IMG/VR virus record: IMGVR_UViG_3300048438_000153
Span: 124,001 to 188,000 of that record
DNA: 64,000 nt
Strand: one strand, 5' to 3'
Shown here piece after piece: positions 8,300 to 64,000 of the stretch; position 1 is the stretch's first letter; each line of letters begins with the position of its first letter. The position numbers and the translations under genes were made by a program. The notes beneath the pieces are model-generated. The model was not told the DNA's origin and searched no databases. It saw only the letters and a list, made by a program, of their open reading frames with translations.

Positions 8300-9100
8300 T
8301 TAGCGACGTGAAGCTCGGAGAGCCTTAATAGCCTGAGCTTGGAGACGAGATTGTCTCTTAGTAACAGCAGTCTCGATGTCAGCCATGCGCTCCGCAAAGT
8401 TCATGAAACGCTCATGGAGGTTCATACCGCCGACCATACCACGAATAGTCGCAACAGCCTGACCGCGCTTGAGGTTAGGACCTGTGAAGGTGAACTTGAT
8501 GTTTTGAGGAGTCTGCTTAAGGACGAGAGTGTAGTCTCCAGTGCCTGACACGATAGTGTCGTCACCCATGCGTCTCCAACGCTCATTGAACAAGCCATAG
8601 TTGCTAAGAAGATCATGGACGAGGTTAAACTCAGTGGTGAGATCTACTTGACCCATGCCCGTCTCTTCCATGCCAGCATCCTCGTGAAGAGGAGAAGCAT
8701 CAGGGACATCACGAAGGCCGAGATCATAAGCTTTACGAGCAAGGAGAACCTTAACTTCGTCATACTTCATGATGGTCAGAGTGCGAGCGGGTGGGAAAAT
8801 GAGATGATACCCAACCATATCCACATAGATTTTGTGCTGACGAATGCCAAGGTCAATCACAGGATTATCATCATCAAAATCAAGAGTGGCTCTTTTAAAG
8901 CCTAGCATACGAGCAGACCTAAGAAGGTCTTTCGCATTCTTTCTCATCTCAACGAGGCTCAACCGACCCGGAGCACGCTGTCGGCGTTTCTTATTAGGAG
9001 CAACGTCCATCTGCTTTGAAGGGTAAAGGGCTTGGCGCTCAAGGTGAGCGATCCTGATTTCAAGATCAGAGAGGATTTCTGAAGCTGTTCTTCTCATCAT
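8300..9100 (-). CDS. Leader-bearing protein (MRRTASEIL leader), putative head cargo
   Basis: Starts MMRRTASEILSDLEIRIAHLERQA. Confidence 0.7.
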   Translation of the reverse strand: MMRRTASEILSDLEIRIAHLERQALYPSKQMDVAPNKKRRQRAPGRLSLVEMRKNAKDLLRSARMLGFKRATLDFDDDNPVIDLGIRQHKIYVDMVGYHLIFPPARTLTIMKYDEVKVLLARKAYDLGLRDVPDASPLHEDAGMEETGMGQVDLTTEFNLVHDLLSNYGLFNERWRRMGDDTIVSGTGDYTLVLKQTPQNIKFTFTGPNLKRGQAVATIRGMVGGMNLHERFMNFAERMADIETAVTKRQSRLQAQAIKALRASRR

Positions 9101-9176
9101 AGACTCCTATAGTCTCAATCGAGGTGTGTTAGAAAACGTCACCTATAAAAGTAGTATAAAGAGAGTAAAAACTCTC

Positions 9177-11865: not shown

Positions 11866-11977
11866 AAGTATTTCAGTGCTTCTTTTCGACCAATGTTTCT
11901 AGGGAGGAGAGCATCATCCCTCTGTATAATACGACACGAAGTATTTCAGTGCTTCTTTTCGACCAGTGTTTCTAGGG
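11866..11977. repeat. 39-bp direct repeat (1 mismatch)
   Basis: aagtatttcagtgcttcttttcgacca[a/g]tgtttctaggg at 11866-11904 and 11939-11977. Confidence 0.85.
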
Positions 11978-12309
11978 TAAAGATAAACAAAATTCTGCTC
12001 TCCGTCTTGATCCACCGCTATGATGACGTGAAAGCTCTCTTCCTCACCCTGAGCTGTACTCATTAAAATTTCAAGTAAGATCTGATCGTCGTCTCCATAA
12101 TCATAATCGACGTGTCTCCTGATCACATCAACATTATCGATAATAGAAAACCCTGTCTTAGTCTTGATCTTGCGCTCAATAAAACCTAAAAGATCAATCT
12201 CTTCCGCAGTTGTATAGGGGCGCATATGACTAGTGTAGCCTGATGTTTTCTCAAGCCGAGCAACTCGGACTTGAAGTTCTCTTAAGATAGATGTGGCGGT
12301 TCTTCTCAT
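11914..12309 (-). CDS. Leader-bearing protein, putative head cargo
   Basis: Starts MRRTATSILRELQVRVARLEKTS. Confidence 0.7.
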   Translation of the reverse strand: MRRTATSILRELQVRVARLEKTSGYTSHMRPYTTAEEIDLLGFIERKIKTKTGFSIIDNVDVIRRHVDYDYGDDDQILLEILMSTAQGEEESFHVIIAVDQDGEQNFVYLYPRNTGRKEALKYFVSYYTEG

Positions 12310-12368: not shown

Positions 12369-13364
12369 TTAATCTTCGTCGTACTCTTGCTGTGCTAAAA
12401 CTAGCATACCCTTAGACACCGCATGGAAAGGGTCGGAGGCATGACGTACTTCAGAGATCTCAATCGGGAATCTCTTCTTCTTAGTCTCAAACACCTCCTT
12501 GAAGAAATCCATGAATCCACCCGCGAGACTCGTTCCCCCACCCACTACAATAGGGATAGGTTTATTCAGAGTGAGATGACCACCCTTCATCACAAACTGC
12601 TGTGCGATGTTATCAAGGGCGTACTCGATGAGAGCCTTGTAGTAGAAAGAAATCGCCTCCTCTTCGCGATTCTTAGGGTCGTTCAAGTCGATACCTTTCT
12701 CCTTTACCGCACACATCTTAGAAGCAGTCCCACCCACTGATCGAGCCGCGCCTTGATCAATCCAATCACCACCCCGAGCCACTGAGAATGAAAGACCCTC
12801 AATGGTGTTGATAGCGAGAGCAATGTTAGTCATCCCCGAACCGAAAGAAATGCCGATCCCTGAGAAGCCCTCTTTGGCTGTCTCAGAAAATACAATCGCC
12901 ATCGCCTCATTTGCAGGATGTGCGGTGTAACCACACTCTTGAACGATGCGCGTAAACACACCCTTATGGTAGACCACATCCATCTGCACGTCTACAGGAG
13001 CAGCAGGGATTGAGAAATAGCAGTGTTCTCCCTCATGGCTAGGCTCACCGAGCACGTCTTTAACCATGTGTCCTAAGACTGTGAGTGAGTCAATCTCATC
13101 AGGTGAAACAAGACCCGCCTTCAGAGGTCTGCGCCCCTCCCGACCAAACATATTAGCTACCTCCATCGCCTCGTCACCGAGTACAAGAAGATGCTCGTCA
13201 GACTCGATGTATGAAACAGAGCCGAGCTTGAGCATTTTCTTAGCTGTGGCGGGGAGGTCGATGAAGAGATCGCGCATACGGCGGATCTTGATTTCTTTCT
13301 TAGCACCTAATCGCGAAGAGACGAGGTTCATTGTGCCGATGTCTAGTCCTACACCTTTACTCAT
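12369..13364 (-). CDS. Actin-like ATPase (MreB/FtsA/ParM superfamily)
   Basis: Phosphate-1 VGLDIGT, connect-1 NEAMA, phosphate-2 ISFGSGMTN, adenosine VVGGGTS. Confidence 0.85.
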   Translation of the reverse strand: MSKGVGLDIGTMNLVSSRLGAKKEIKIRRMRDLFIDLPATAKKMLKLGSVSYIESDEHLLVLGDEAMEVANMFGREGRRPLKAGLVSPDEIDSLTVLGHMVKDVLGEPSHEGEHCYFSIPAAPVDVQMDVVYHKGVFTRIVQECGYTAHPANEAMAIVFSETAKEGFSGIGISFGSGMTNIALAINTIEGLSFSVARGGDWIDQGAARSVGGTASKMCAVKEKGIDLNDPKNREEEAISFYYKALIEYALDNIAQQFVMKGGHLTLNKPIPIVVGGGTSLAGGFMDFFKEVFETKKKRFPIEISEVRHASDPFHAVSKGMLVLAQQEYDED

Positions 13365-16663: not shown

Positions 16664-16885
16664 TCACTTTGTGATGTGAAAGAAGATTTTGTTAAGAGTC
16701 TCGTCAGCATCCTTAATGTCCCCCTTGATCTCCTCGATCTCTTTCTGCTGATTATCCACTTTAGTGGCGAGCACAGCAACCTCTGTTGAAAGCTTGAAAG
16801 ACCAAACAATCGCGGGGATCGCGAGCGCGGTCGCGATCTTAAATGTCCAATCTAGTGCTTTTTCCGTTTGCTCTGATAAAGGCAT
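16664..16885 (-). CDS. Small single-TM coiled-coil protein (holin/XhlA-like candidate)
   Basis: 73 aa; hydrophobic IATALAIPAIVWSF followed by heptad repeats. Confidence 0.5.
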   Translation of the reverse strand: MPLSEQTEKALDWTFKIATALAIPAIVWSFKLSTEVAVLATKVDNQQKEIEEIKGDIKDADETLNKIFFHITK

Positions 16886-16933: not shown

Positions 16934-17641
16934 CTATCTAAAGCGTCTCAGTGAAGCGAACTTGTTTCTGTGGTACTCAGACAGCATACGCTGAGCCCTC
17001 GCCCTATTTACCTTGAACTTCCTCATGAGCTTCTCTTCAATCAAGTCCTCACGAAGACTCATTTTGAGCCAAGTGCGAATCTCACTGTTGACCTCAAAGG
17101 GGGGGATGAAAGCATATCTGTCTAGATCACGATTCAGGTAGTCGAAAGAGGCTTTCTTAGCTGTGAACTCGTCTGCGAGATACAACCCAAGCCCTTTTCT
17201 AACGACCTTGCGAATAACAGATTGACTTACGCCCCTGACCTTAATCTTCAACCTACGCATCACATCAACTACTTCTTTACCTGTGTTGGAAAGAAGCGTC
17301 TCTGCTGAGACAAGGTACTTAATACCAATCAATGGAGTGCTCTCGTTGCGAATGAGAACAAACTCATTACCGGGATAATCCTCGAAAACTGAGTCAGGTC
17401 TGACGTCTACTTTTCTTTTTGCTTCAGATAAAGGGACAAGAAAGTAGTCTTCAAAAGAAGAAACTGACTTACTTTCCGCGAGTTCTTCGAGGTCTAGTTC
17501 TCTTGGGTCGTAGATAGATTCTCTGAGAAATCTTTTCACGCTTGACAGGTCTGCCTCTGTTTCTGAGGCAGTGAGGTTTTCTAAGCGAGCGATCCTAATC
17601 TCTAGATCACTAAGGATTTCTGAAGCTGTTCTTCTCATCAT
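16934..17641 (-). CDS. Leader-bearing protein, putative head cargo
   Basis: First 30 aa identical to those of 17744-18307; remainder only weakly similar at best. Confidence 0.75.
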   Translation of the reverse strand: MMRRTASEILSDLEIRIARLENLTASETEADLSSVKRFLRESIYDPRELDLEELAESKSVSSFEDYFLVPLSEAKRKVDVRPDSVFEDYPGNEFVLIRNESTPLIGIKYLVSAETLLSNTGKEVVDVMRRLKIKVRGVSQSVIRKVVRKGLGLYLADEFTAKKASFDYLNRDLDRYAFIPPFEVNSEIRTWLKMSLREDLIEEKLMRKFKVNRARAQRMLSEYHRNKFASLRRFR

Positions 17642-17677
17642 AGAGCCTTTCTTTTTCTCTGAACGAAAGAGATCACT

Positions 17678-17691
17678 CTATAAACAATCTA
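17678..17691 (-). promoter_or_regulatory. Putative late promoter TA[AG]-N4-T[TC]TAT (representative of ~17 sites)
   Basis: TAGATTGTTTATAG. Same pattern at 11843, 16924, 18344, 19299, 21720, 22523, 25540, 27106, 32978, 43273, 44626, 52127, 58870, 60608 (minus) and 5430, 5456, 33081, 56515 (plus). Confidence 0.7.
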
Positions 17692-17743
17692 CTCACTCAA
17701 GATTCAGGATCTCACCGCCCATATACAGGACTGATCAGATGAC

Positions 17744-18307
17744 CTAAATCTTCCTCCTAGATTCTTCTATTACCTTATCCCATTTTTCTTCGTTTGTAAG
17801 ACGACGTGAGTAGATAAATTGACCTAAGCCACTCCTCTCAAACTTTTTCTGATCTGAGTTCGGAACGCAAAACTGCAAGTCCAACTCCTCACAATATTCA
17901 CCCAAAGATCCTCTGCCTGACTTGTTTTTTAAAAGATCATCGGAGTTGGTAATGCGAGCTCCAAAGTAACTTCCTTCTCGCGGATCTCCCATGACGAAGA
18001 CAACCACCCCCCATGTCTTAACACCTCTGAGATGGCAGAAAACCATTTCATTTTCCTCAACCTTCACATAGGGCTTAACGTCTTTAAGGTGGCAGAAAAT
18101 AAGACTACGGTATGGGTTAAGGTAACTCTCCGTGTCGATTTGGTCATCTTCTAAAAGCTTCTGAAGAATCTCCGTTCTTTCGTCAAATACTTTTCTCTTG
18201 AGCCAACCCCCCAAACCAGCCTCTGTTTCTGAGGCAGTGAGGTTTTCTAGGCGAGCGATCCTAATCTCTAGATCACTAAGGATTTCTGAAGCTGTTCTTC
18301 TCATCAT
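17744..18307 (-). CDS. Leader-bearing protein, putative head cargo
   Basis: Starts MMRRTASEILSDLEIRIARLENLTASETEA. Confidence 0.75.
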   Translation of the reverse strand: MMRRTASEILSDLEIRIARLENLTASETEAGLGGWLKRKVFDERTEILQKLLEDDQIDTESYLNPYRSLIFCHLKDVKPYVKVEENEMVFCHLRGVKTWGVVVFVMGDPREGSYFGARITNSDDLLKNKSGRGSLGEYCEELDLQFCVPNSDQKKFERSGLGQFIYSRRLTNEEKWDKVIEESRRKI

Positions 18308-18362
18308 AGAGCCTTTCTTTTTCTCTGAACGAAAGAGAGCACTATATAAACAATCTACTCAC

Positions 18363-19259
18363 TCAAAGAAAGTTTCTCGGACTCAGAACACCCTTACCAA
18401 CATGAGGCCCGAACGCAGACCTGATACCAATGCCGTACTTCGGCTGAGAAAGACCTCTCATGAACTTGGTTGTTCTCGTTTTAGCTTCTACTGACATAGA
18501 CCACATCTGCTCCGCGCTTGACTTAAGACCTTCATATTTAGAAGATCGGTCAAGAGAAAGAGAAATACCGCCTATAGAGTAGTCGAACTCGTCTACAATC
18601 CAATTGGCTTGAAGCGCCATCGCCGCGAACTGAATCGCGCCCTGTAAGATAGGCGTTCTCCACGCGGGCTTCTGCTGAACTAGCTGTGAGAGATTCCTCA
18701 GATTTTCAGTCTCAGGTGGTTGCATATTCCACCAGTCTAACGCCCTCTCTAGGTACTCAAGAAACTCAGCATCCTCCCATACCTGACCGAACACCCTGTT
18801 GTACGCCCCAATACTAGACTCATGCTCAGGTGGCCTGAAGTGATAATACTTGTCAGGGTTCTGATCCCTCAGAAGAAGCCTGAGCTTATCTACCATTTCT
18901 TTCTCTGCTCGGTTCATCGTAGCCACGAGGGTAAGGTCATTCGAGACGATCTCGAACTCTTGAACCACTGTCTGAGGAGGACTGTTTACAAGCTCTTTCA
19001 ACGTCCACCTGATCCTGTAAGTGCCGTAGCTCGCTGTCGGAGGTATTCTTACACTCGCATAGTATTCCCCCACAGAAGGGTTCTCAGGTATACGCGTAGG
19101 ATCTCCAATTAAGACCTCAGCTTCAGGAGGTGTCGGGTCTACATAGTATAGTGCGTATGTGATCTCGGACGCATTTGAGACGTTCCCACTTGAGTTAGTG
19201 AGAAAGATGTCCAAGTCACCTCGACCAAGTATCTGATTTCTCTTAAACAAGACAGCCAT
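18363..19259 (-). CDS. Putative head-tail adaptor protein with N-terminal Ig-like domain
   Basis: Beta-rich N-half (GEYYAS...GTYRIRW); helical C-half (LRLLLRD...LEYLERALD...FDYSIGGISLSLDRS) like adaptor proteins. Confidence 0.55.
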   Translation of the reverse strand: MAVLFKRNQILGRGDLDIFLTNSSGNVSNASEITYALYYVDPTPPEAEVLIGDPTRIPENPSVGEYYASVRIPPTASYGTYRIRWTLKELVNSPPQTVVQEFEIVSNDLTLVATMNRAEKEMVDKLRLLLRDQNPDKYYHFRPPEHESSIGAYNRVFGQVWEDAEFLEYLERALDWWNMQPPETENLRNLSQLVQQKPAWRTPILQGAIQFAAMALQANWIVDEFDYSIGGISLSLDRSSKYEGLKSSAEQMWSMSVEAKTRTTKFMRGLSQPKYGIGIRSAFGPHVGKGVLSPRNFL

Positions 19260-19308
19260 CGCCAAACCCTCTCTTCCTATGTGTGAAAGAGAGAGTGATA
19301 TAAAGGCA

Positions 19309-19743
19309 TTATATGTCTAAGGGGTGACGGAAATCGTACTCTCGACTCTTAAGAGCCCTCAAGATGCTCACCACATCCTTGAAGCTCCATCTCACACCAC
19401 CTGAATCCTGAGCCGTCTCTTGTAAGTCAGGATAAGGTTTGAAGGTAGACAGGTCAATCGCTTGTATGTGTGTATCTCCCTGAGAAAGAGCCTTACACAC
19501 GCGATGACAACCATCCACGATCTCCCCATCCCAAATAAGAATAGGTCGGCTTAGGTCAGCGTCGAGACAACCGCCCAAGTGATCCGCGATGTGATCTTCA
19601 CCCCAAGACCAACCCTCTAAGAAAGAAGGGGGGATTCTCCACATCTGTGAGGGGAGGTCTTGGGAGAGCTGATGTAGACGCTCTACATACCAAACATCAT
19701 TCTTAGAAGGGTCATTCTTCGATCTCTGAGAGAACGTCTGCAT
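19309..19743 (-). CDS. ParB/Srx-like N-terminal domain protein
   Basis: ADLSRPILIWDGEIVDGCHRVCKAL. Confidence 0.65.
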   Translation of the reverse strand: MQTFSQRSKNDPSKNDVWYVERLHQLSQDLPSQMWRIPPSFLEGWSWGEDHIADHLGGCLDADLSRPILIWDGEIVDGCHRVCKALSQGDTHIQAIDLSTFKPYPDLQETAQDSGGVRWSFKDVVSILRALKSREYDFRHPLDI

Positions 19744-19755
19744 AAAGGTAGACTC

Positions 19756-21687
19756 CTAGTCATCAAGATAGTCGCCTAACCCTATATCATCTATGATCGT
19801 TAAGGAAGCCTCTTTCTGCTGAAGGGCAATCTCATCGAAGATGTCTAAATCTGAGGCTTTTTTCTGCTGAGATCTTTCCTTCTTTCTTTGGCGCTTCTTA
19901 TCCGCTCTCTCCTGACGCTTCTTTTTCTTAGAAGCATCCCCGTCCCCCCCCCAAGGGCTACGATTAATACCTAGAGTATTCTCAACAGTATTCCTCTTTC
20001 CAAAGAGTCGGCTAATAGCGCCCTCAGCATTAAAGTTGATGTTCATGTCCTTTTCGATTTCTTTAAGATTGTTCTCGACTTTAACAGGGGAAATCAAACC
20101 TTTGTCCATCGCGCCCTCATACTTCTTCCAAAGAATGTGAGACTTCTGATCCTTGATCTGAGTGTCCCTCCATTTCTTGAAAGCTGTCTCAACGTCTTTC
20201 TTAGTCCACACGTCGCAGTTCTGAGGATTTCTAGGTCTAATAGGTACTTTCTTACCTTTAGCATTAGTGCGTGTCCAACCCTCTGAATGAGGCTTACACG
20301 TCTCTCTCTTAATCTCCCCCACGCTAGGAATACGAGCCATCTTCAAGCTCGCGACCCTCGCGGGATTACCCCCTACTTTACGGATCGAGAAAGAACCATC
20401 GTCATCAAAGTGACTGATCCTCTTAACCTCGAAAGAACACACACCGCGCTCATCGAAGTCTTTATGGAAGCCTAGATACTCACAATCTTCAGGAATGAGA
20501 TAGAGGGAGATCTTTCTCTTATCGAAGTCATAGATGAGCTGAGAACTCGTGAACATATTATCTGTCCGACGCACCACGTTGCGAGGCGAGTTAAAGTCCT
20601 CAAACCTCTGAGCGTAGAGTCTCTCAATCAGCTCTTCGGGAGAAGATATCTGAGGGAGAAGGTCGAGCACTTTCTGAAGCCGAGCTTCAGAGCTTTTCTT
20701 GTTCTCGCCAAGTGTATAGCCCGCGTCAGGATACCTAAGACCGTGATTGGACATCGCGTGATGCTTGTCCTTTCCTGTGAGGTCAGTGATATACGCTTCA
20801 TGCTTAGCTGTATGCTCTATAGAAACAGCCTGTACGCCATCGCTAACAATCGTATGACCCCTGACCCCTCCCTCGTAAGCTAAGGCTGATTCAAGAGCAT
20901 CCTCGAACGTCCTACACTTGAGAGCATTGAGAATCCTAGAGGCATCTCTTGACCCGACAGCGCCTAAGTGACCATTTTCTTTCTTCTTCCCCTTAGATCC
21001 TTCTTTCTCATCCCACAGAACCATAAGCGCCGAGTTCGCGACGGCGATGCCGAACTCGTTGATGCCCTCTAGCCAACCTGTGTTCTCATCCCGAAAGAAA
21101 ACGACCTCTACACCTCCACGATGGGTGTGGAAGACCTTAAGCTGAGGAACGTAGTTTCTGTCCCTATTTTTGAACATGAACTTCTTCCCACCGACTTCAG
21201 AAAAAGCGATGACGCAAGATTGCTTTAACATATTTGCTCGACGGTACATACGCGCCTCTTTCTTGATATATTTTTCATTCCAAGATTCCCACTTGCTATG
21301 TTGTGGGCTAGATTTAAGTGAAGGGTCATGTCCCCAATTTTTAAGACTGATTTCCCACTTAGACATCCCCGTTTCCTCTACGGGCTGACCTGGTTTACCC
21401 CCTAGCATACGGGAGTTAAATCCTATCTCTTGTTTAGAGTTCACAAAATCGTCATCGGACCATTCAGAGAAAGGCTTACTCTTTCTGCGCTTGATGCGGT
21501 GAAAAGAGTCATACCCTGACTGAATCCCACCCTCTTCTTTCGCCTCTTGTCGATTGATAGAGGCGAGTAGGCGGTCTTCATCTTCCGCCCACGAATCAAG
21601 GGCTTTCTGACTCATATTGATGAGCCCATGCCACTTGTCGTAGACCTCTTTCTTCTCTTCTTCTGAAAGTGCTGAATACCTATACAT
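19756..21687 (-). CDS. Multi-module protein: DUF3140-like + Ntn-hydrolase (Cys nucleophile) + basic domain
   Basis: INMS...SLKNWGHDP (DUF3140-like); C158 VIA...FKNRDR...EGINEFGIAV...SNH (Ntn fold); KxA/RVA linkers. Confidence 0.7.
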   Translation of the reverse strand: MYRYSALSEEEKKEVYDKWHGLINMSQKALDSWAEDEDRLLASINRQEAKEEGGIQSGYDSFHRIKRRKSKPFSEWSDDDFVNSKQEIGFNSRMLGGKPGQPVEETGMSKWEISLKNWGHDPSLKSSPQHSKWESWNEKYIKKEARMYRRANMLKQSCVIAFSEVGGKKFMFKNRDRNYVPQLKVFHTHRGGVEVVFFRDENTGWLEGINEFGIAVANSALMVLWDEKEGSKGKKKENGHLGAVGSRDASRILNALKCRTFEDALESALAYEGGVRGHTIVSDGVQAVSIEHTAKHEAYITDLTGKDKHHAMSNHGLRYPDAGYTLGENKKSSEARLQKVLDLLPQISSPEELIERLYAQRFEDFNSPRNVVRRTDNMFTSSQLIYDFDKRKISLYLIPEDCEYLGFHKDFDERGVCSFEVKRISHFDDDGSFSIRKVGGNPARVASLKMARIPSVGEIKRETCKPHSEGWTRTNAKGKKVPIRPRNPQNCDVWTKKDVETAFKKWRDTQIKDQKSHILWKKYEGAMDKGLISPVKVENNLKEIEKDMNINFNAEGAISRLFGKRNTVENTLGINRSPWGGDGDASKKKKRQERADKKRQRKKERSQQKKASDLDIFDEIALQQKEASLTIIDDIGLGDYLDD

Positions 21688-37429: not shown

Positions 37430-38013
37430 CTTTTATCTACTCCACCGTCAACGCTGGGAAGTCTGCTAACCTACTTATGAGAGCCCATTCCTGTTCAGAA
37501 AGAGGAATGAAGTTCCTTATCCTCGCACCTGACATAACAGAGAGCAGAGATGGAGTTGGTCAGGTTGCATCCCGAATCGGGTTCAAGCACGAAGCAGTAC
37601 CTCTTTCTAAGAATTGCGACCCTCTTGAGATCGTCTTCAGGAAGCAACTGAAACAATCTACCACATATGACGTGATCTTCATTGATGAGTCTCAGTTCTT
37701 AACGAGAGAACAGGTAATGCAAGTCACTCGAATCACGGACAATCTGAGTATCCCTGTGTTCGCCTATGGACTTAGGACAGATTTCATGGGAAACCCGTTT
37801 GAGGGCGCTAGTTTCTTAATGGCTTGGTCAGACAAGATTGAGGAGATCGCTACCTTCGCTGTGGGCGGAGAGAAAGCCATCTTCAATCAGAAAGTGGGCG
37901 TAAACGGAGAGCGCGTCACTGAAGGTGAAGTGGTAGACGTGGGCTTCCACTACCTCCCTGTGACGCGCTCAGAGTTTGACCTCCAATCATATTGGAAGTC
38001 AGACCTCTCTTAG
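37423..38013 (+). CDS. tdk: Thymidine kinase
   Basis: YSTVNAGKS, ASRIG, IDESQFL, YGLRTDF..PFEGA. Confidence 0.93.
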   Translation: MLTFIYSTVNAGKSANLLMRAHSCSERGMKFLILAPDITESRDGVGQVASRIGFKHEAVPLSKNCDPLEIVFRKQLKQSTTYDVIFIDESQFLTREQVMQVTRITDNLSIPVFAYGLRTDFMGNPFEGASFLMAWSDKIEEIATFAVGGEKAIFNQKVGVNGERVTEGEVVDVGFHYLPVTRSEFDLQSYWKSDLS

Positions 38014-41000
38014 ATTGAGCTACGGACGTTGAACGTAAACTGAATGTAGAGGAGAGGGAAGATCGGCTTGTAGTAAACCTCTACAAGCAACCCAGTTGGG
38101 TCTTCAGGATCGCGGTCAACAGAAAGACCTGTGTAAGAGTCAATAATCTGCTCTTTCACGAGATCCTTAAACATCATGTTCACGCGACCCTCCACTTGAC
38201 CAACAACGCTAGGGAGGTACTTCTCGCCAATGTAACCATTAAGAAGGTTACGAGCGCGGAGGTGAACCTCATCTGCGATCTGAACTACCGTAGGAGTCTT
38301 AGAAAGAATAGAAGTTCCGTCAGTGGTAAGACCCTGACGCACGTTCAAGACTGCGCCCTGTTGCTGAAGAATCGTCACACCTGATGAAGCAGCCTTATTG
38401 GCGTCAACCGCATCAAGATTTCTCAAGAGCCCATTGAAGCCAACCACTGTGCGGTTCGTCCAAGGCGTAGCTACGTCGATGTTCGCTGAGGTAGTTACGA
38501 AAGCCAACGCAACTGCGAGGTAACGACCATCTACAATCACATTCTGAGACACGCCGTTGGTGTCCGTGAGAGTGAGGCTCACGATGTCAGGATAGATCAA
38601 GCGAACTCGACTATTTCTGACGTTCCTCGCGAGAGTAGATGCTTGCTCAGGTGAAGTCCCTGCGGGAACACCCAAGATCGCTGTGCGCTCAGAGCGGAAT
38701 CTCAAGCTAGACTGAACATCACAGTGAACTGAGATGTCAGAAAGAAGCTCAGAAGAAGCTGGAATGAGAGGCACGATCACAGATGGAGAAACACCTACAG
38801 CGATCTCTCCCTCAACCTCGATGAGCGCCTGACTCATCTGAGCGACAGAAGGCTCAGCTTGACCCTCTTCAAGAGGGATCTGCTTGAGAGCGATGGTCTG
38901 CGCTCCGTTTAAGAAAGCAATGTACGCACCGAGAGAAAGTGGGTTGTCTACAGCAACAGGCCCGTAAGCAGAAACCACGTCAGAAAGACGATTGAAGATG
39001 CCTGTGTTGTAAACAGTCTTTCTGCGAGTCACATCCATGAAGTACGGAGTGCCGATAGAAGGCTCTTTACCATCCTTAAGATATGTCTCGATGATCGCTG
39101 TGTCTCCAACCTCTGTACCCACCGTGTTTGACACGATGAGGCTCACGCCTGTAATCGCGCTCACAGGGATGTTAGCGTTCGCCCTGATTGCACGAGAAAC
39201 CTTGAAGCTCAGAGTTGAGTTGACGCCTGTAGGATAAGGCTGAGCGCCCACTCTAGGGAGAAGCGTGAAAGAGAAGCCTGTCACTGCGTCAACGTAAGTC
39301 TGACCGATCACGCCGTCTGCACCTGTTCCGTCATTAAGAACTGAGGTGTTCGCAGACCCCGATCCTGATGCGTTTGTAGAGGTTACGAAGAAGCCCTGAT
39401 AAGCGTTCTCACCTACTTCGCCGTCACCTGAAACAACACCCAATCTCGTGGTGTGCCTGAGAAAAGCTGTAGCACTGCCGAAAGAAAGGATTGAAGAGAT
39501 GCCTGTAGTAAGAGACTCGAAAGCAACGAAGCTCTCACCGATAGCGTTCTTCTCGATGTAAGAAATACCCTGAGATCCGAAGCCGCCTACGGGAAGAACA
39601 CTCGTCATCACCGCGCCTACGCTCGCTGAGCTGTGTTGCATGACCGCAGAAGAAAGAGCGGTTGCTGAAACGAGAGTCGCCACTTCAGTCTGATCCCCAA
39701 ACAAGCCGAGAAGATCATTAGCAGTACCCTCTAAGACTCTGATGTAGTCATCCTCAGTGTTGCCTGTAGCGACAATCCTGAGTCGATCACCTTCAATGAC
39801 GACAGAGCCGAGAGCGCCGAGCGCAGTGTTAATCTGAGCCCATGCGGTACCAGCATCCGTCAAGCCGTCCTTGAACAAGTCTGTGTCAGTACCCGCGCCT
39901 GATGCTGAGAAAGTAACAGAGACAGTCTCACCTGATATATCGAGGTTAAGCGTATTATTCTGAGCGAACAGAGCATTCGTTCCGTCATAGAAAGTAATCT
40001 CAGGACTACCGTTCACAGCAGACTGAGCATTCCTACCTACTCTTAAGAGGAGAGAAGGACTCTCGACCACTGAACTACGCGCAGAAAGAACTTCTTCAAG
40101 CTCAAGACCTGACTCCGCCAACAGTGATCCGCCTGTTACCTCAAGACCAAGCTGAACAGGTGCAGTATAGTTTGCACCGACACGAGTTCTGTTTCTGAGG
40201 ACGAGCCTATCCTTGAGCGCGTTAGAGTCAGCAGAAAGGTCGGTAGAAACGAAGCTCGCTACAGGGAGAATACCGAACTTAGTCTGAGCACCGCCAACGC
40301 CCGTGTCTGTGTCGATACCTGAGATCAGAGCAAAGTCGGTGTCGTCTCCTGTAGAAAGGAACTCGATGTAACCGCTCGTATCTCCCGCCTCAAGACCGTC
40401 AAGAGTAAAGACGAGGAAACCATCTTCTACAGATACGTTGAGGTCAACCGCCCCATTGAAGTTAGCAAGATCGTCAATCTGAGTCTCTATCTCTGTCGCC
40501 ACATCACTTGCGTTGTCGTAAGCCTGAGCTGTGAGAGTGAGGTCATGCTGAGTCGCACCGTTAGCATCACCTACATAGTTAACTCTAAGGACGTTGTGCC
40601 TACCTGATGAGAGATCAACCGCGCCCATTGTGACCATTGAGTAGTATTTAGCGCCAACAGCGTTGAACGCAGTGTTGATCGCTAAAGCGAAGTCCGTTGC
40701 AGTGGCGTTAGCAACAGCGAGGAGGTTCACAGAAACGTCCACGTTGTCGATCTTTAAGAAGATGTCACCGCTGATCGCGTCATTACCCAAGTCAGCGTTG
40801 TCAGTCTCAGGTACATATGGGAGAGGGTTGCCCACATGATAAGTGAAGAGACTTGACCCTTGAGTGGAAGGCGAGCTGAGGTTGATTGTGTTCTCACCGT
40901 TGCTATCTACTGTAATCTTAAATTCGTCTGAGTTGCCCGAAATGAACGCGAAAGGCGCTGGGTTCGGAGCGACGAAGATAGAGGGAGTCGGATCGAAACT

Positions 41001-58993: not shown

Positions 58994-59872
58994 TTAGCGA
59001 GTAACGGTGAGGCGAGCAAGACCGCGTGGGTTGTACGCGCCGATACCCAAATTCTCAAAGACTGAGAAACCGATGGTGCGAGCCTTCGGATCGTCAGCAG
59101 AAAGAACAGTAAGCTCAGTACGGACAGGGATGCGTCCGAACATCTCAGGCTCACAGCAGACGTACACAGTGCCGACAGGAACTAGACGGCTAGTGATGAT
59201 CTGTGCGCCCCAAAGAGTAGCCTGAAGACCAGTCTTAAGGAGCGCTGCTTGGCTCTCGATGTCGAGAATGTCGCGACCAAACTTACGGATGTCAGCGTAG
59301 TCACGAGCGTTCATGAAGACGCGAGAGACACGGAGGTCGTGACGCTCGATAAGAGCGTATGCGTCAGCGAGAACAGCACCGTTAAGAGGAGCGATGACAG
59401 GAATGTCAGCGTTAGTCTGACCAGGGAGACTGTCGAAGCCTTGAGTCGCAACCGCGTCGAGGATAGCGAATACACGCTCGTCCTCAGCCGCCTGAATCTG
59501 AGCGCGAGCCAAGTCTTGAGCCCTCTCGATCAGATCGAAGCGACGCTCCTTGATCTGAGTGAGTGGGATCTCAGGGTTTGATGCGATCTCGAAAAGAGGG
59601 AAGATCACACGACGTGGCTTGGTGATAGCGAGGATGTTCTCGCCCTCTTCACCTACCACGAACGCGGTCACGTCAGGGTCTTTGTCGTAGATCGGAAGCG
59701 CACCATCAGGAAGTTGCTCTACGAGGAAAGTCTTACGACCAACGCTCGTATAGTCACGACGGAGACGGAGAGGTTGTGTCATTGAAGCGGCTAGCTTCGC
59801 ACGACCTTGTGGGGTCTTAATGTAGTCAGCAATGATCTTTTGCTTTACTGCGTTATCGACGTTGTTACTCAT
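58994..59872 (-). CDS. Major capsid protein (HK97 fold)
   Basis: 292 aa; order protease-scaffold-decoration-MCP followed by a terminator; IQAAEDERVFAILD spine helix, VFMNARDYADI, LWGAQIITS. Confidence 0.82.
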   Translation of the reverse strand: MSNNVDNAVKQKIIADYIKTPQGRAKLAASMTQPLRLRRDYTSVGRKTFLVEQLPDGALPIYDKDPDVTAFVVGEEGENILAITKPRRVIFPLFEIASNPEIPLTQIKERRFDLIERAQDLARAQIQAAEDERVFAILDAVATQGFDSLPGQTNADIPVIAPLNGAVLADAYALIERHDLRVSRVFMNARDYADIRKFGRDILDIESQAALLKTGLQATLWGAQIITSRLVPVGTVYVCCEPEMFGRIPVRTELTVLSADDPKARTIGFSVFENLGIGAYNPRGLARLTVTR

Positions 59873-60639: not shown

Positions 60640-62649
60640 TTAACCGAAGTACTTGCTGACGTCGGGAGCTGACTCCCAAAGCTTAGAAAGCTCGTCAGAA
60701 GCAGAGCTTGCTTCACGGCTGATGTTACCGAGTGTCTTAACAGACGCTTGGCGAGCCTGAGTCTGAGGGCGGAAAGAAGCTGATTTCTGAGTAGTAGCGG
60801 TAGCCTCCTCTTCAGACGCCTCCTCCTCAGATGCCTCTTCATCAGCGGCTTGGAAGATACGAGCGAGCTTAGGATCGACATCGACATTATCTGAAGCCAT
60901 GTGAAGACCCATTACGTCCTCAGCCATGTCCTCAGCCATATCCTCAGCCATATCCTCAGCCATCATGGTTGCCTCGTGATCCTCAGCCATCATGGTTGCC
61001 TCGTGATCCTCAGCCATATGATGCATCGCCATTTCTTCTTCAGCAGTCATGTCGAATTGGCTAGGATCATTCTGATCAGCCATCATCATCTCTGCTTCCA
61101 TCTCAGCGAGCATCTCATTAAGCATTGCTTGCTCTTCAGAAGCTAGACGCATCTCATCGAAATGAGCTTTCTTCTTCTTAGGAACACGTTGACCTTCAAC
61201 ATTGTGCTTGTAAGGGCGAGGTCTTGCCTTCTGACCCTGTGGGTTTGACTTTGAAGGCCAACGCTCAGGGTTGTTCACATAGTAGGTGTGGTTGTAACTA
61301 GCCTTTGATCCAGGCTCTTGCAACAATTCTTTGCGAGCTTTAGTCTTAGGTCGTTTACCCTTCTGACCACTGCGATTCCAATTCCAAATAGCCTTTCTAT
61401 CTTCATCAGAAAGATAGTCTTGCCAATCGGGATTAGCCTTACCGTAATCCTTAATGCCCTTACCGCGACGACCCCAAGCCTCTTTGTCCTCAGCCATCAT
61501 GTCCATCTCAGCCATGATCTCTGCGAACTCTTCATCAGAAAGAATATCCTCAGCCATCAACTCGTCGTTGGCTTTTTTCTCTTTTTTTCCTTCTGATTGA
61601 GGAACACCCCAAAAGAGATGTTTGTACTTCTGATAGTACTCTTTGTTGTGCTCTTGCTTGTCCTCATCAGTCCAACCCGTAGTTCCGGGAGAAGAGCGGT
61701 ACTGACCTCTCATCTTGGAGTCCATATACTCAAATTTGTCTAGAGTTTTTCCGTAGGGCTCTTGCGTGTGAGGAGATTTAAGTTTGCCTGGATCCGTGAA
61801 TGACTTCCATCCATCTTCTTTCTTGCCCCAAGCACCTTTAGCAACGATGTTCATCTCAGCCATGATCTCAGCCATGCGGTCTGCATCGCCCATGTGAGAA
61901 GCCTCGTGCATCATCTCAGCGAGAATGGCCATGTCCTCTGACATCATTTCTGAGGCGAGTTTCTTAGTAGGACCTTCGCCCTCTTCCTCGTCGAGAACCT
62001 CAACGCTCTCGTCGTCGCCCTCATGACCTGTCTCTTGCTGAACTACGTCCTCTGCCATGCGACGCATTTTAGAAGCGAGACGGGCGTTAGCCGCTTTGAG
62101 CATGGCGATTTCTTCAGCCATGTCTTCTTCAGCCATCATCTCAGCCATGACGTTATCTACGCCCTCGTCATCACCCTCGTAGCCTGTAGCCTCTTGCATC
62201 GCATCCTCTCCAAGAAAGTCTGAAGCGATACGCTGGATCTTGGCATTGATCTGACGTGATGGGAGATCCATGTAACGAAGGGCAAGATCCTCGATCTCAT
62301 CCTGTGATGCAGTCCTACCGAGACGGCTCTCAGCAATCTCGATGCACTTAGAAGCCTTGCGCTCCATAGCCTTGCGGAGATTCTGCTCGTAGAGGTCAGA
62401 AGTCTCCTCATAGTCTGAAATGATGTCCTCAGTAGCTGCGGGATGATCTGCTTCCCAACTGTATGAAGCGGGGGCAGGTCCTGAGCGGTAAGGACCTTCG
62501 TGAACGCCCTCGCCAAATTCTGAGTCGATGCCATAAGCGTCAACTGAGGGCTGTGCTTGTGATGCGGGATGACCGAAGCTCTCGAAGCCCTGATCATCAT
62601 AACCTGGTAGGCTAGAAGTGTTAGCCCTACGGAAACTATTCCTAGACAT
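60640..62649 (-). CDS. Putative scaffold/core protein with MAE repeats
   Basis: Between protease and capsid genes; very acidic and Met-rich with many MAE(D) units; probable start MSRNSFRRA with SD AAGGA. Confidence 0.65.
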   Translation of the reverse strand: MSRNSFRRANTSSLPGYDDQGFESFGHPASQAQPSVDAYGIDSEFGEGVHEGPYRSGPAPASYSWEADHPAATEDIISDYEETSDLYEQNLRKAMERKASKCIEIAESRLGRTASQDEIEDLALRYMDLPSRQINAKIQRIASDFLGEDAMQEATGYEGDDEGVDNVMAEMMAEEDMAEEIAMLKAANARLASKMRRMAEDVVQQETGHEGDDESVEVLDEEEGEGPTKKLASEMMSEDMAILAEMMHEASHMGDADRMAEIMAEMNIVAKGAWGKKEDGWKSFTDPGKLKSPHTQEPYGKTLDKFEYMDSKMRGQYRSSPGTTGWTDEDKQEHNKEYYQKYKHLFWGVPQSEGKKEKKANDELMAEDILSDEEFAEIMAEMDMMAEDKEAWGRRGKGIKDYGKANPDWQDYLSDEDRKAIWNWNRSGQKGKRPKTKARKELLQEPGSKASYNHTYYVNNPERWPSKSNPQGQKARPRPYKHNVEGQRVPKKKKAHFDEMRLASEEQAMLNEMLAEMEAEMMMADQNDPSQFDMTAEEEMAMHHMAEDHEATMMAEDHEATMMAEDMAEDMAEDMAEDVMGLHMASDNVDVDPKLARIFQAADEEASEEEASEEEATATTQKSASFRPQTQARQASVKTLGNISREASSASDELSKLWESAPDVSKYFG
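60916..61017. repeat. Coding tandem repeats (12-bp MAED and 27-bp MAEDHEATM units)
   Basis: Repeated tcctcagccat units. Confidence 0.85.
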
Positions 62650-62674
62650 AGGATTTCCTTTCTGCATGAAGGGC

Positions 62675-64000
62675 TTACCGCCCATGAACGAATGTGATAA
62701 GCTTGGAAAGTCTTACCAAGCGAAGTGAGTCTTTGCGAGTTAACTTTGAACCATGACACTCCTCAGCGTCAGAGATAAAGCTAGCCACTTTATTATACCT
62801 GTCTGCTGAGTCTATTTGACTAGCAATACGGTACAGGTAAGAAGGTAGGTAGACGTCGAAACGATCATTGACGAGTCTGATGTTATCGACTGCCTCTTTC
62901 TTAGAGGAGGCGATCTTCACAGCGGTGTCAAGAGCTGAGAAATAGAGATTCTTTCTCTTTATCTTTCTCTTACTCTTGCCCTCTTTAATGATTGTATCGT
63001 CAGCGGTAGTAGGGTCGCCTGTTGCGGGTACATTAACCGCTTTCTGAGCGAGCTCCTCTTTGATCTCCTTTTCGAGCTTCTTTCTCATGCGACCAACGAG
63101 AGCTTCAGTCACTACGCCCTCAAGTTGATCGAGAATAGAATCAGGAGTCTCTTCTTTCTTAGTGGATTCACCCTCTTCATCGCCCTCGCCATCTCCGAAG
63201 TCGAAAGGACCTGCGAGATGGGATGAAGCAGACTTGCTCAACCACTGCGGAGGAACTTGATTAAGTTTTTCCTCTTGTGGGTTGGCGTCAGCGGAAGGGA
63301 TTTCAAGAGTATTCCTAGCGACCGCGCCCTTAAAGGCAGGTATGGCAACCCAAGAAGCCTCAATGAAGGTTACGCCACCTGTTTCCCCCGTAGTCTCATG
63401 ACCACAAAGCTCGGCAACACGGTGCTTGTTTCCATTCTCATCGAAGAAAACATTACCCTTCTCATACTTAACGTGTCGGCACATCTGAGGCTCATCAGCC
63501 GCGACGTGACCGCACTTGGTGCAGATGGTGAAATCGACAGAACAACCCATCGACATACCGTTCATTTCACCCGATAAGATTTGTCTAACGAGATCTTCGT
63601 GCTTTCTATCTGTGGCTACAAGAATATCCACATAGATAGATTCACCAATATCTCGCATAACAGCATCAATGATACGCCCTTTAGAGAGCTCTTCAACTTG
63701 AACGTGTTCAACAAAGTTATGCGCCCCCACAAACGTCTTATAAGACTTCTTAATAACGCCCCTAGACCAACAGTCGAGGTTGTTATTGATGTACTTATCT
63801 GTCTCGGAGGTGACTCGATAGTCTGCATACTTTCTGTTAATATTCTGACCCTCTTCCTCAACTGAACCTGTCTTTACATTAGGGACAGAAACAGCGTCTA
63901 CGGAGCACACAATCGTAGAGTGTGTGAGTAGAAACCGATCAGGAGTGAAGGGCTCGCCTAAAAGCTCTTCTGCTTTCTTCTTAAGGCTCGAATCGAGGCG
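62675..64000 (-). CDS. Prohead maturation protease (HK97/assemblin-type, with Zn-binding insert), 5' end outside window
   Basis: Frame open to 64000; FVEH...GRIIDA, GMSMG, CxxC..C.H insert, FIEASWVAIPA. Confidence 0.8.
   Translation of the reverse strand, partial: RLDSSLKKKAEELLGEPFTPDRFLLTHSTIVCSVDAVSVPNVKTGSVEEEGQNINRKYADYRVTSETDKYINNNLDCWSRGVIKKSYKTFVGAHNFVEHVQVEELSKGRIIDAVMRDIGESIYVDILVATDRKHEDLVRQILSGEMNGMSMGCSVDFTICTKCGHVAADEPQMCRHVKYEKGNVFFDENGNKHRVAELCGHETTGETGGVTFIEASWVAIPAFKGAVARNTLEIPSADANPQEEKLNQVPPQWLSKSASSHLAGPFDFGDGEGDEEGESTKKEETPDSILDQLEGVVTEALVGRMRKKLEKEIKEELAQKAVNVPATGDPTTADDTIIKEGKSKRKIKRKNLYFSALDTAVKIASSKKEAVDNIRLVNDRFDVYLPSYLYRIASQIDSADRYNKVASFISDAEECHGSKLTRKDSLRLVRLSKLITFVHGR

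What the first reader, a model, noticed from the sequence alone, without database searches (positions are those of the whole stretch)
17553..18366. Portable promoter-RBS-leader cassette copied onto different payloads
A 148-bp unit occurs twice, 666 bp apart, with ~3 mismatches. It spans the promoter motif, the RBS and 30 codons of leader. Identity ends abruptly after ...TASETEA and the two genes then diverge strongly. The leader codons recur at 9035-9100. This suggests new genes join the cargo set by acquiring the cassette, or that 5' ends are homogenised by recombination, with the junction at the predicted Ala cut site.
Basis: partly seen in the sequence, partly recalled or inferred. Interest (0 to 1): 0.78.

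Follow-up and report, generated by a model that had tools for sequence, protein, structure and literature searches.

The report
Shared leader tag on phage cargo genes
Two neighbouring genes of an uncultured marine giant phage share a near-identical promoter, ribosome site and 30-codon leader because recombination recently copied one 5' end onto the other, and the leader peptide is a clade-wide N-terminal tag on over a thousand small unknown proteins, probably a signal for loading them into the phage head.

Summary
A 148-nt direct repeat (17553-17700 / 18219-18366, 3 mismatches, 666 nt apart) lies on the minus strand. It covers a TTTATA box, 5'UTR, RBS and 30 codons of two tandem genes, A (16934-17641) and B (17744-18307).

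The payloads are not unrelated. A metagenomic intermediate links them as old, strongly diverged paralogs.

The near-identity comes from recent gene conversion:
- The two cassettes are 97-98% identical, but only 85-89% identical to their own orthologs.
- Leader dS is 0.10 between the paralogs and 0.66 between orthologs.
- An independent tandem pair in a related phage shows the same pattern.

The leader peptide (MRRTASEIL.DLE.RIARLE, then often [KR]xA[SG]) starts 11-13 genes in this 275-kb genome and 10-31 genes in related genomes. It also starts 1,119 cluster representatives in public data, almost all ORFan payloads. It is under strong peptide-level selection (dN/dS 0.02-0.12).

The slot holding A and B is a hypervariable hotspot. 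The window also encodes a head maturation protease, a scaffold and a phage-G-type capsid protein. The scaffold carries conserved [KR]xAS sites.

Best reading, inferred and not shown: a T4 CTS-like capsid-targeting and processing propeptide. This is a new variant of a known kind.

The parts
17552..17700 (-). Cassette copy 1 (gene A). TTTATA box at 17679-17684, 5'UTR with a degraded hairpin, RBS-like GAAAGG at 17646-17651, double ATG at 17636-17641, and 30 leader codons at 17552-17641.
18218..18366 (-). Cassette copy 2 (gene B). TTTATA box at 18345-18350, RBS-like GAAAGG at 18312-18317, and 30 leader codons at 18218-18307. Its upstream end overlaps the 3' end of the 300-aa gene.
16934..17641 (-). 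Gene A, 235 aa: leader plus an ORFan payload. The AF2 model gives a leader helix at residues 6-21 and an alpha/beta core at 45-150. No fold or family match.
17744..18307 (-). Gene B, 187 aa: the same leader on a payload that is a remote paralog of A. There is only a weak ESM-atlas lead to PemK/MazF-like proteins.
8300..9100 (-). Third leader-tagged gene in the window (266 aa, MMRRTASEILSDLEIRIAHLERQA...). Two TTTATA boxes lie upstream.
11914..12309 (-). Fourth leader-tagged gene in the window (131 aa, MRRTATSILRELQVRVARLEKTSG...). A TTTATA box lies upstream.
18363..19265 (-). Conserved 300-aa gene that bounds the hypervariable slot on the upstream side. It has its own TTTATA box and a strong 5'UTR hairpin at about 19266-19310.
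16664..16885 (-). Conserved 73-aa gene that bounds the hypervariable slot on the downstream side.
62675..64000 (-). Head maturation protease. The ORF runs past the window end; the full protein is 472 aa (L013:6678-8093:-).
60640..62685 (-). Putative scaffold, 681 aa, acidic with MAED repeats. It has conserved [KR]xAS sites, including ...KCIEIAESRLGRTAS... and ...ARQASVKTLGN....
58994..59872 (-). HK97-fold major capsid protein, homologous to Bacillus phage G gp27.

Best explanation
The window comes from an uncultured marine myovirus of about 275 kb or more. Its capsid protein is of the Bacillus phage G type.

Genes A and B are tandem paralogs in a hypervariable slot of the structural region. 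Each is expressed from its own TTTATA-box promoter and RBS. Each starts with a leader of 21-30 residues: MRRTAS, an amphipathic helix (EILSDLEIRIARLE), then a short tail that in most family members reads [KR]xA[SG].

The near-identity of the two 150-nt 5' ends comes from recent gene conversion between the two copies, probably from B to A. Homologous recombination needs the conserved leader as its substrate and stops where the payloads are too different. The same substrate also allows genes in the slot to be deleted or duplicated.

The leader itself is a clade-wide N-terminal tag. The most likely function is a capsid-targeting and processing propeptide. In this model the helix docks the protein to the scaffolding core of the prohead. 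The head maturation protease, encoded 45 kb away in the same window, then removes it at or near the [KR]xA|[SG] site. The diverse small payloads stay in the head and enter the host with the DNA, as T4 internal proteins do.

Shown: the repeat, the paralogy, the conversion signature, the hotspot, the size and diversity of the leader family, peptide-level selection, and the presence of protease, scaffold and capsid genes.

Inferred: promoter activity, targeting to the head, cleavage and its position, and injection.
For: Repeat and boundaries.

Paralogy of A and B through the intermediate P0005.

Gene conversion:
- The window's A and B cassettes are 97-98% identical, against 85-89% to their L020 orthologs. 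Payload orthologs are 78-89% identical and A against B is about 37%.
- Leader dS is 0.10 between the window's A and B, and 0.66 between orthologs. Leader dS between window A and L020 A (0.66) exceeds payload dS (0.32).
- The UTR signature CGTTCAGAG is shared with the B lineage.
- An independent tandem pair in G002 has a cassette of about 195 nt.
- The single A gene of L021 sits on B's upstream flank (86% identity).

Hotspot: the slot holds 0, 1, 2, 4 or other sets of genes in relatives.

Leader family:
- 11 strong copies in the genome, plus a short form at genome position 31946 and a degenerate copy at 111451.
- 17, 31 and 9 copies in relatives, and a divergent 10-gene dialect in G001.
- 1,119 cluster representatives, with the leader at residue 1 in 147 of the top 150.
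- Payloads fall into 63 BLAST families from 75 proteins and 120 from 144, with almost no Pfam hits.

Peptide-level constraint: dN/dS 0.02-0.12.

Concerted evolution: genome-specific leader dialects are carried by orthologous payloads, and codon identity is in excess.

Head machinery: protease, capsid protein, and scaffold with conserved [KR]xAS sites enriched over shuffles.

Motif after the helix: 30 of 66 leader proteins have it, against 2.6% background. Internal RIARLEKxAS linkers and a duplicated leader unit occur in P0020, P0021 and P0022.

Promoter box: TTTATA is under-represented genome-wide, peaks at -50 to -41, and is present upstream of 6 of 11 leader genes against 18 of 248 other genes (Fisher P 1e-4).

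Precedent for the mechanism: the T4 CTS (PMC9026906, PMC5694885, PMC3012670, PMC12373910).
Against: No direct evidence that any leader protein is in virions, is cleaved or is injected.

- The complex prediction gave no answer.
- The [KR]xA[SG] motif was defined after looking at the data, and only about half of the leader proteins have it. A and B themselves read NLTAS, with no basic residue.
- The leader HMM does not hit the scaffold. The resemblance is limited to about 7 residues.
- The protease's specificity is unknown, and its model was too poor to use.
- The phage is uncultured, and cultured relatives (phage G, Tunturi_5) lack this leader.
- Logan contigs showed no cassette-to-cassette deletion joints.
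- The B-to-A direction of conversion rests on two or three diagnostic sites.
Confidence: 0.55

Rival explanations
1. The leader is a localisation or assembly tag for a destination other than the head interior. Candidates are the tail tube or baseplate lumen (as with eCIS/PVC cargo signals), a membrane or an intracellular compartment. It could also be simply a short coiled-coil oligomerisation handle. The 5' conversion still applies.
For: The A/B slot lies among tail-type genes. The neighbouring 453-aa protein matches a 'minor tail protein' of Tunturi_5, and a giant sheath-domain ORF lies in the window. The helix has a heptad-like pattern. No direct link to the head was obtained.
Against: The tail of the leader shares a [KR]xAS motif with conserved sites in the scaffold and with the protease linker. 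Internal copies of the helix end plus the motif occur as inter-domain linkers, which suits a processing site better than a docking handle. Leader genes are scattered over the whole genome, not clustered in the tail module.
Confidence: 0.22
2. There was no gene conversion. The near-identity reflects a very recent partial duplication that placed a copy of one gene's 5' end in front of a pre-existing gene, as in the reader's first option (a payload acquires the cassette).
For: The tract has sharp edges on both sides. At clade level, payload families exist with and without the leader helix: G003_149648 against G002_214381, and G001_245812.
Against: The B ortholog in L020 already has the cassette and the same 30-residue leader, at 85-87% nucleotide identity to the window's copy. 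The association therefore predates the split, and only the homogenisation is recent. A and B payloads are homologous through P0005.
Confidence: 0.1
3. The conserved 5' coding sequence is mainly an RNA-level element, such as a translation-control or sRNA target site, rather than a peptide signal.
For: Runs of 23-27 identical nucleotides at the start of several leader genes. Codon identity within a genome is 0.53-0.57 against 0.32 expected. Hairpins in the 5'UTR pair with the RBS.
Against: Between orthologs the leader has dS 0.66 with dN/dS 0.02-0.12. Dialects differ in codons yet keep the helix pattern. The hairpin is degraded in the window's own A and B copies.
Confidence: 0.04
4. The repeat is an assembly artefact.
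For: Short-read assemblies break at the repeat.
Against: L022 has the same arrangement at 100% identity (though it may not be an independent assembly), and L020 has it in diverged form. Contigs from several seawater runs bridge from payload to cassette.
Confidence: 0.01

Closest known systems
T4 / T-even capsid targeting sequence (CTS) of internal proteins Ip1-3 and Alt
   Same: A short N-terminal leader shared by otherwise unrelated small proteins. The genes lie in hypervariable hotspots. Adjacent genes have identical propeptides (IPII and IPIII). In T4 the leader targets proteins to the scaffolding core and the prohead protease removes it (PMC9026906, PMC5694885, PMC3012670, PMC12373910).
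   Different: There is no sequence similarity: the leader has no tblastn match in 50,697 phage records. The leader is longer (21-30 aa against about 10) and helix-forming. The protease is of a different family: PF03420 is absent and the enzyme is related to phage G gp19. The candidate cleavage motif is [KR]xA|[SG], not cleavage after Glu. The scale is much larger: 11-31 genes per genome and 1,119 clusters. Packaging and cleavage are unproven here.
Propeptides of giant phages SPN3US, phiKZ and 201phi2-1 (for example SPN3US paralogs gp53 and gp54, which share an identical N-terminal 15 residues)
   Same: Giant-phage head proteins carry N-terminal propeptides that the prohead protease removes. 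Paralogs have identical N-termini (PMC5694885).
   Different: Those propeptides are long (often over 100 aa), are not one conserved sequence across dozens of genes, and are cut at A/S/G-x-E. Here one conserved 21-aa leader is shared genome-wide.
Concerted evolution (gene conversion) between tandem paralogs
   Same: Paralog identity exceeds ortholog identity in a sharply bounded tract, and synonymous sites are homogenised.
   Different: The tract is confined to the promoter, RBS and leader module of genes whose remaining sequence has diverged almost beyond recognition.
Encapsulin cargo-loading peptides and eCIS/PVC N-terminal cargo signals (recalled from memory, not checked here)
   Same: A short terminal peptide directs diverse cargo into an HK97-fold shell or a contractile particle.
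   Different: These are different sequences, in different systems and usually at a different terminus. No homology was tested.

Membership tests
T4-type CTS-bearing internal proteins | An N-terminal peptide shared by otherwise unrelated small proteins of one phage | tested here: met
   11 strong copies in the genome. 75 payloads fall into 63 BLAST families.
T4-type CTS-bearing internal proteins | Sequence homology to the T4 CTS, and a gp21-type (Peptidase_S77) prohead protease | tested here: not met
   The leader has no tblastn match in the phage collection at E<=10. PF03420 is absent from the genome. The protease is of the phage G gp19 / Tunturi_5 type.
T4-type CTS-bearing internal proteins | The leader is removed by the prohead protease at a consensus site | not testable with these tools
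   Indirect evidence only. The [KR]xA[SG] motif follows the helix in 30 of 66 proteins, and conserved copies occur in the scaffold and the protease linker.
T4-type CTS-bearing internal proteins | The proteins are packaged in the head and injected with the DNA | not testable with these tools
   The phage is uncultured. The complex prediction gave no answer.
T4-type CTS-bearing internal proteins | The genes lie in hypervariable genomic hotspots | tested here: met
   In relatives, the slot between the 300-aa and 73-aa genes holds 0, 1, 2 or 4 genes, or different leader genes.
Gene conversion between paralogs | In the tract, paralogs within a genome are more alike than orthologs between genomes | tested here: met
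   97-98% against 85-89% nucleotide identity. Leader dS 0.10 against 0.66.
Gene conversion between paralogs | A sharply bounded tract inside otherwise diverged homologous genes | tested here: met
   The tract runs from -59 to +91 with unrelated flanks. The payloads are homologous only through the intermediate P0005.
Sigma-70-independent late-type promoter (T4 TATAAATA-like box) | A conserved AT-rich box at a fixed distance upstream of late genes, with a mapped transcription start | tested here: inconclusive
   TTTATA is under-represented (88 found against 181 expected), peaks at -50 to -41, and is 15-fold enriched at leader genes. No transcript data are available.
Phage G-type huge phages (HK97-fold capsid protein gp27 family) | A major capsid protein homologous to phage G gp27 | tested here: met
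   PDB 6WKK chain A at E 7e-63. NF042927 at 156 bits against a cut-off of 80. phrog_2522 at E 4e-51.

The most novel reading that the evidence does not exclude
The leader is a general cargo-loading and processing tag for a phage-G-type capsid. On this reading it marks, from sequence alone, a repertoire of more than 1,000 families of small proteins that uncultured marine giant phages package and inject, probably as host-takeover or anti-defence effectors. The tag evolves in genome-specific dialects together with the scaffold and protease. The tag-coding DNA also serves as the recombination substrate that shuffles, duplicates and deletes cargo genes.
Probability: 0.4. Interest if true: 0.75.

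Novelty: new variant of a known kind. Interest (0 to 1): 0.6.

Why it matters
If the tag is a head-targeting signal, the packaged and injected proteome of a whole clade of uncultured marine giant phages can be read from sequence alone. That covers 10-30 genes per genome and more than 1,100 protein clusters, nearly all ORFans. It gives a concrete candidate list for anti-defence and host-takeover functions.

It would also be a second, independent case beside the T4 CTS of a leader that both addresses cargo and acts as the recombination handle through which cargo genes are exchanged. Here it sits in a different capsid and protease lineage.

The conversion signature is a clean natural example of concerted evolution confined to a promoter-RBS-leader module.

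Tried and rejected
- Megablast and tblastn of the locus and of the leader against 50,697 phage records found no match.
- Pfam and PHROGs on 10 leader proteins gave only WGR, on the degenerate member, and weak noise.
- PF03420, PF04586, PF05065 and PF07068 were searched in the genome and none was found. The head module was found later with PHROGs.
- The word-indexed search restricted to the leader region collected only 22 candidates, which is too insensitive.
- Logan contigs from four seawater runs were laid on the locus. The contigs break at the repeat and show no joints. The loose ends are other leader genes. This is no evidence for or against deletion variants.
- A four-chain complex prediction (protease, scaffold N-domain, capsid protein, leader) scored 0.00 with the verdict 'no answer'.
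- An AF2 model of gene A found no fold match in PDB or AFDB clusters.
- The AF2 model of the protease had pLDDT 42 and was unusable.
- The ESM atlas gave only a sub-threshold PemK/MazF lead for B.
- Repoila et al. 1994 (PMC395341) is not held. The phage G multi-omics paper reports nothing on shared leaders.
- The RNA-element reading was rejected on dN/dS. The assembly-artefact reading was rejected on the diverged L020 copy of the same arrangement.
Full report
**Observation**

The window is positions 124,001-188,000 of a single 275,102-bp IMG/VR virus contig (linear, CheckV 88% complete). The repeat finder returns a 148-nt direct repeat at 17553-17700 and 18219-18366, 98% identical and 666 nt apart. 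A genome-wide blastn finds the full unit only at these two places.

The genes are on the minus strand. Gene A (16934-17641, 235 aa) and gene B (17744-18307, 187 aa) both begin MMRRTASEILSDLEIRIARLENLTASETEA.

Numbered from the first ATG, the identical tract runs from -59 to +91. It has four mismatches: -37, -32, +58 (Leu, synonymous) and +90 (Ala, synonymous). The sequence on either side is unrelated. The leader codons recur at 9046-9103.

**What the two genes are**

Direct BLASTP of the two payloads gives nothing (E 0.95). Database searches recover three sets of relatives:
- orthologs of A: P0002 to P0004, 64-89% identity;
- an ortholog of B: P0007, 72% identity;
- a 165-aa protein, P0005, that matches both A and B.

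With its leader removed, P0005 still hits payload A at E 4e-12 and payload B at E 3e-8. A and B are therefore old, strongly diverged tandem paralogs, not unrelated payloads.

Neither payload has a Pfam or PHROG family. An AF2 model of A (pLDDT 73.6) has the leader as a helix at residues 6-21 and a confident alpha/beta core. It has no fold relative in PDB or AFDB clusters.

**Why the 5' ends are identical**

Two syntenic relatives were fetched.
- L020 has 305 aa | 104 | 259 (pentapeptide) | B | A | 73 | ... | 453.
- L021 has 298 aa | A | 73 | ... | 453.

Nucleotide identities from the aligned cassettes:

| Comparison | Cassette | Payload |
|---|---|---|
| Window A vs window B | 97-98% | about 37% |
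| Window copy vs its L020 ortholog | 85-89% | 89% (A), 78% (B) |

NG86 estimates agree:
- Leader dS is 0.10 between the window's A and B, and 0.66 between orthologs.
- The leader dS between window A and L020 A (0.66) exceeds their payload dS (0.32).
- In L020 the A and B leaders have dS 0.65, while their payloads are saturated.

This is the signature of a recent gene conversion in the window's lineage, on top of older homogenisation. A UTR signature (CGTTCAGAG, shared with the B lineage, against CAGTCAAAG in A orthologs) suggests the direction was B to A. That rests on few sites.

The far-upstream flank of L021's single A gene is 86% identical to the window's B flank. This is what a cassette-by-cassette deletion of B would leave.

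An independent tandem pair in the related genome G002 (149808 and 150463) shares a cassette of about 195 nt on diverged payloads. The phenomenon therefore recurs.

**The locus is a hotspot**

Forty-one IMG/VR loci were retrieved through the flanking 300-aa gene. The space before the conserved 73-aa gene varies as follows:

| Locus | Content of the slot |
|---|---|
| Five relatives (e.g. L024) | Gap of 33-64 nt (empty) |
| L051 | Also empty (ORF listing) |
| L021 | A only |
| Window | B + A |
| L020 | Four genes (104, 259, B, A) |
| L023 (flank 94% identical) | A 474-aa zinc-finger protein, three different leader genes and a 113-aa ORF |
| L039, L048 | Other leader genes |

**The leader is a large family**

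A 22-column profile (A2) finds 11 strong copies in this genome. There is also a short form at genome position 31946 (MDRLYDLMVRVARLERTS) and a degenerate copy on a WGR-domain protein at 111451.

| Related genome | Leader genes |
|---|---|
| G002 | 17 |
| G003 | 31 |
| G005 | 9 |
| G001 | 10, in a divergent dialect (MISQKLASLEARIAKLE...K[KQ]AS) |

Phage G, Tunturi_5 and a 485-kb uncultured phage lack the leader.

An exhaustive HMM search of 1.84 billion cluster representatives finds 1,119 proteins at E<=0.001. The leader starts at residue 1 in 147 of the best 150.

Payloads are short (median about 134-144 aa) and highly diverse. They form 63 BLAST families from 75 proteins and 120 from 144. Only 2 of 150 and 2 of 61 proteins have a Pfam hit.

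Between orthologs the leader has dN/dS of 0.02-0.12. The constraint therefore acts on the peptide, not on an RNA sequence.

Leaders also form genome-specific dialects. Orthologous payloads carry the dialect of their own genome. Within a genome, synonymous codon identity is 0.53-0.57 against 0.32 expected.

Leaders can be lost or duplicated:
- G003_149648 keeps MRRTAT but lacks the helix present in its G002 ortholog.
- P0021 has the unit KRTAS-helix-RKAS twice.

**Link to head assembly**

PHROGs and BLAST identify three head genes in the window:
- A head maturation protease at 62675 to beyond the window end. It hits phrog_18299 at E 1e-15. It is homologous to the Tunturi_5 head maturation protease (E 3e-33) and to phage G gp19.
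- An acidic 681-aa repeat protein in the scaffold position (60640-62685).
- An HK97-fold capsid protein at 58994-59872. It hits phrog_2522 at E 4e-51, PDB 6WKK phage G gp27 at E 7e-63, and NF042927.

After the helix, 30 of 66 leader proteins carry [KR][QTKRSN]A[SG] within 16 residues, against 2.6% of background ORFs. The motif was defined post hoc, and the leaders are not independent of one another.

The scaffold has the same motif at sites conserved in all four genomes...KCIxIAExxLG[RK]xAS... and ...AR[QK]A[SA]VKTLGNISREA.... It is enriched over shuffles at P 0.0005-0.03. Three of the four proteases have the motif in the linker after the catalytic domain.

Some metagenomic proteins carry an internal RIARLEK[QS]AS between domains.

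Together this suggests a targeting helix followed by a maturation-protease site. It is inference. The complex prediction gave no answer, and the protease model was unusable.

**Promoter and UTR**

TTTATA occurs 88 times in the genome against about 181 expected. When it lies upstream of a gene it peaks at -50 to -41. It is present there for 6 of 11 leader genes against 18 of 248 other genes (odds ratio 15, P 1e-4). This fits a promoter box, but no transcript data exist.

Between the box and the RBS there is a hairpin (CUCUCUUUC, loop, GAAAGAGA). It is strong in L020 A and B, in L021 A and in the 300-aa gene (z -3.1 to -4.1). It is degraded in the window's own A and B.

**Comparison with known systems**

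The closest known system is the T4 capsid targeting sequence. It is a leader of about 10 residues, shared by otherwise unrelated internal proteins. It targets them to the scaffolding core and is removed by gp21. The IPII and IPIII propeptides are identical, and the ip genes lie in a variable hotspot (PMC9026906, PMC5694885, PMC3012670, PMC12373910). The SPN3US paralogs gp53 and gp54 also share identical N-termini (PMC5694885).

The present system works like these but is not a member:
- There is no sequence similarity.
- There is no gp21-type protease.
- The leader is longer and helical.
- The candidate cleavage motif is different.
- The scale is far larger.

Literature searches found no description of this leader.

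**Verdict**

This is a new variant of a known kind. The conversion and the family-wide tag are well supported. The head-targeting and cleavage function is the best-supported inference but remains untested.

Noticed in passing
window 19266-19310 (-); also genome positions 134849, 208667 and 146528 (minus strand): Several TTTATA-box transcription units have a 5'UTR hairpin. A CTCTTTC-type tract pairs with the purine-rich RBS region. It is 12 bp and -20.9 kcal/mol upstream of the 300-aa gene. It could mask the RBS or stabilise the 5' end. It is not universal.
   Followed up: partly
window 60640-62685 (-): The 681-aa putative scaffold has acidic, Met-rich MAED/MMAED repeats. Its N-terminal domain (about residues 26-176) and its C-terminal 35 residues (VKTLGNISREASSASDELSKLWESAPDVSKYFG) are conserved. 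The middle varies greatly in length between genomes (494-690 aa in total).
   Followed up: partly
window 62675-64000 (-) / L013:6678-8093:-: The head maturation protease carries an invariant Cys/His cluster (C191-x2-C194 ... C205-x-H207) inserted after the GMSMGCS motif. This looks like a zinc-ribbon insertion.
   Followed up: no
window 19756-21687 (-): A 643-aa ORF next to the hotspot has a weak hit to the peptidase C45 / acyl-CoA:6-APA acyltransferase (Ntn-hydrolase) family. A related 469-aa ORF lies in the equivalent slot of L029.
   Followed up: no
window 38010-42809 (-): A 1,599-aa ORF has a tail-sheath C-terminal domain at its very end (weak hit). It is unusually long for a sheath protein.
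   Followed up: no
window 52137-54785 (-): An 882-aa ORF has a C-terminal Dps/ferritin-like DNA-binding domain (phrog_3636, phrog_858, DUF5856) within the structural region.
   Followed up: no
genome 228.1-231.8 kb (outside the window; L015/L016): A tandem array of units of about 336 nt (also read as 129- and 465-nt periods), 82-90% matching. It produces a family of eight ORFs with similar N-termini (MVFPSAEILSR...).
   Followed up: no
P0021; G003 149648 (-) = L070; G002 214381 (+): The leader unit is bounded by two R[TK]A[ST] motifs. P0021 has the unit duplicated in tandem. The G003 ortholog of a G002 leader gene has exactly the helix deleted (MRRTAT|QWPP...). This suggests slippage or recombination between the two short repeats.
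   Followed up: partly
L002:12259-12840:+ (genome 27259): A leader-tagged 194-aa protein has a Cys-rich zinc-ribbon-like segment (CPDC...CEKC) directly after the leader.
   Followed up: no
L023 6978-8402, L039 7001-8380, L029 7035-8138, L048 8504-9844: In many relatives the first gene of the hotspot is a 370-470-aa protein that starts with a CPxCKK zinc-finger motif. It is absent from the window.
   Followed up: no
window 12369-13364 (-): The ortholog of this 331-aa ORF in L021 carries a precomputed Pfam hit to PF25216 (Volactin, an actin-like family).
   Followed up: no
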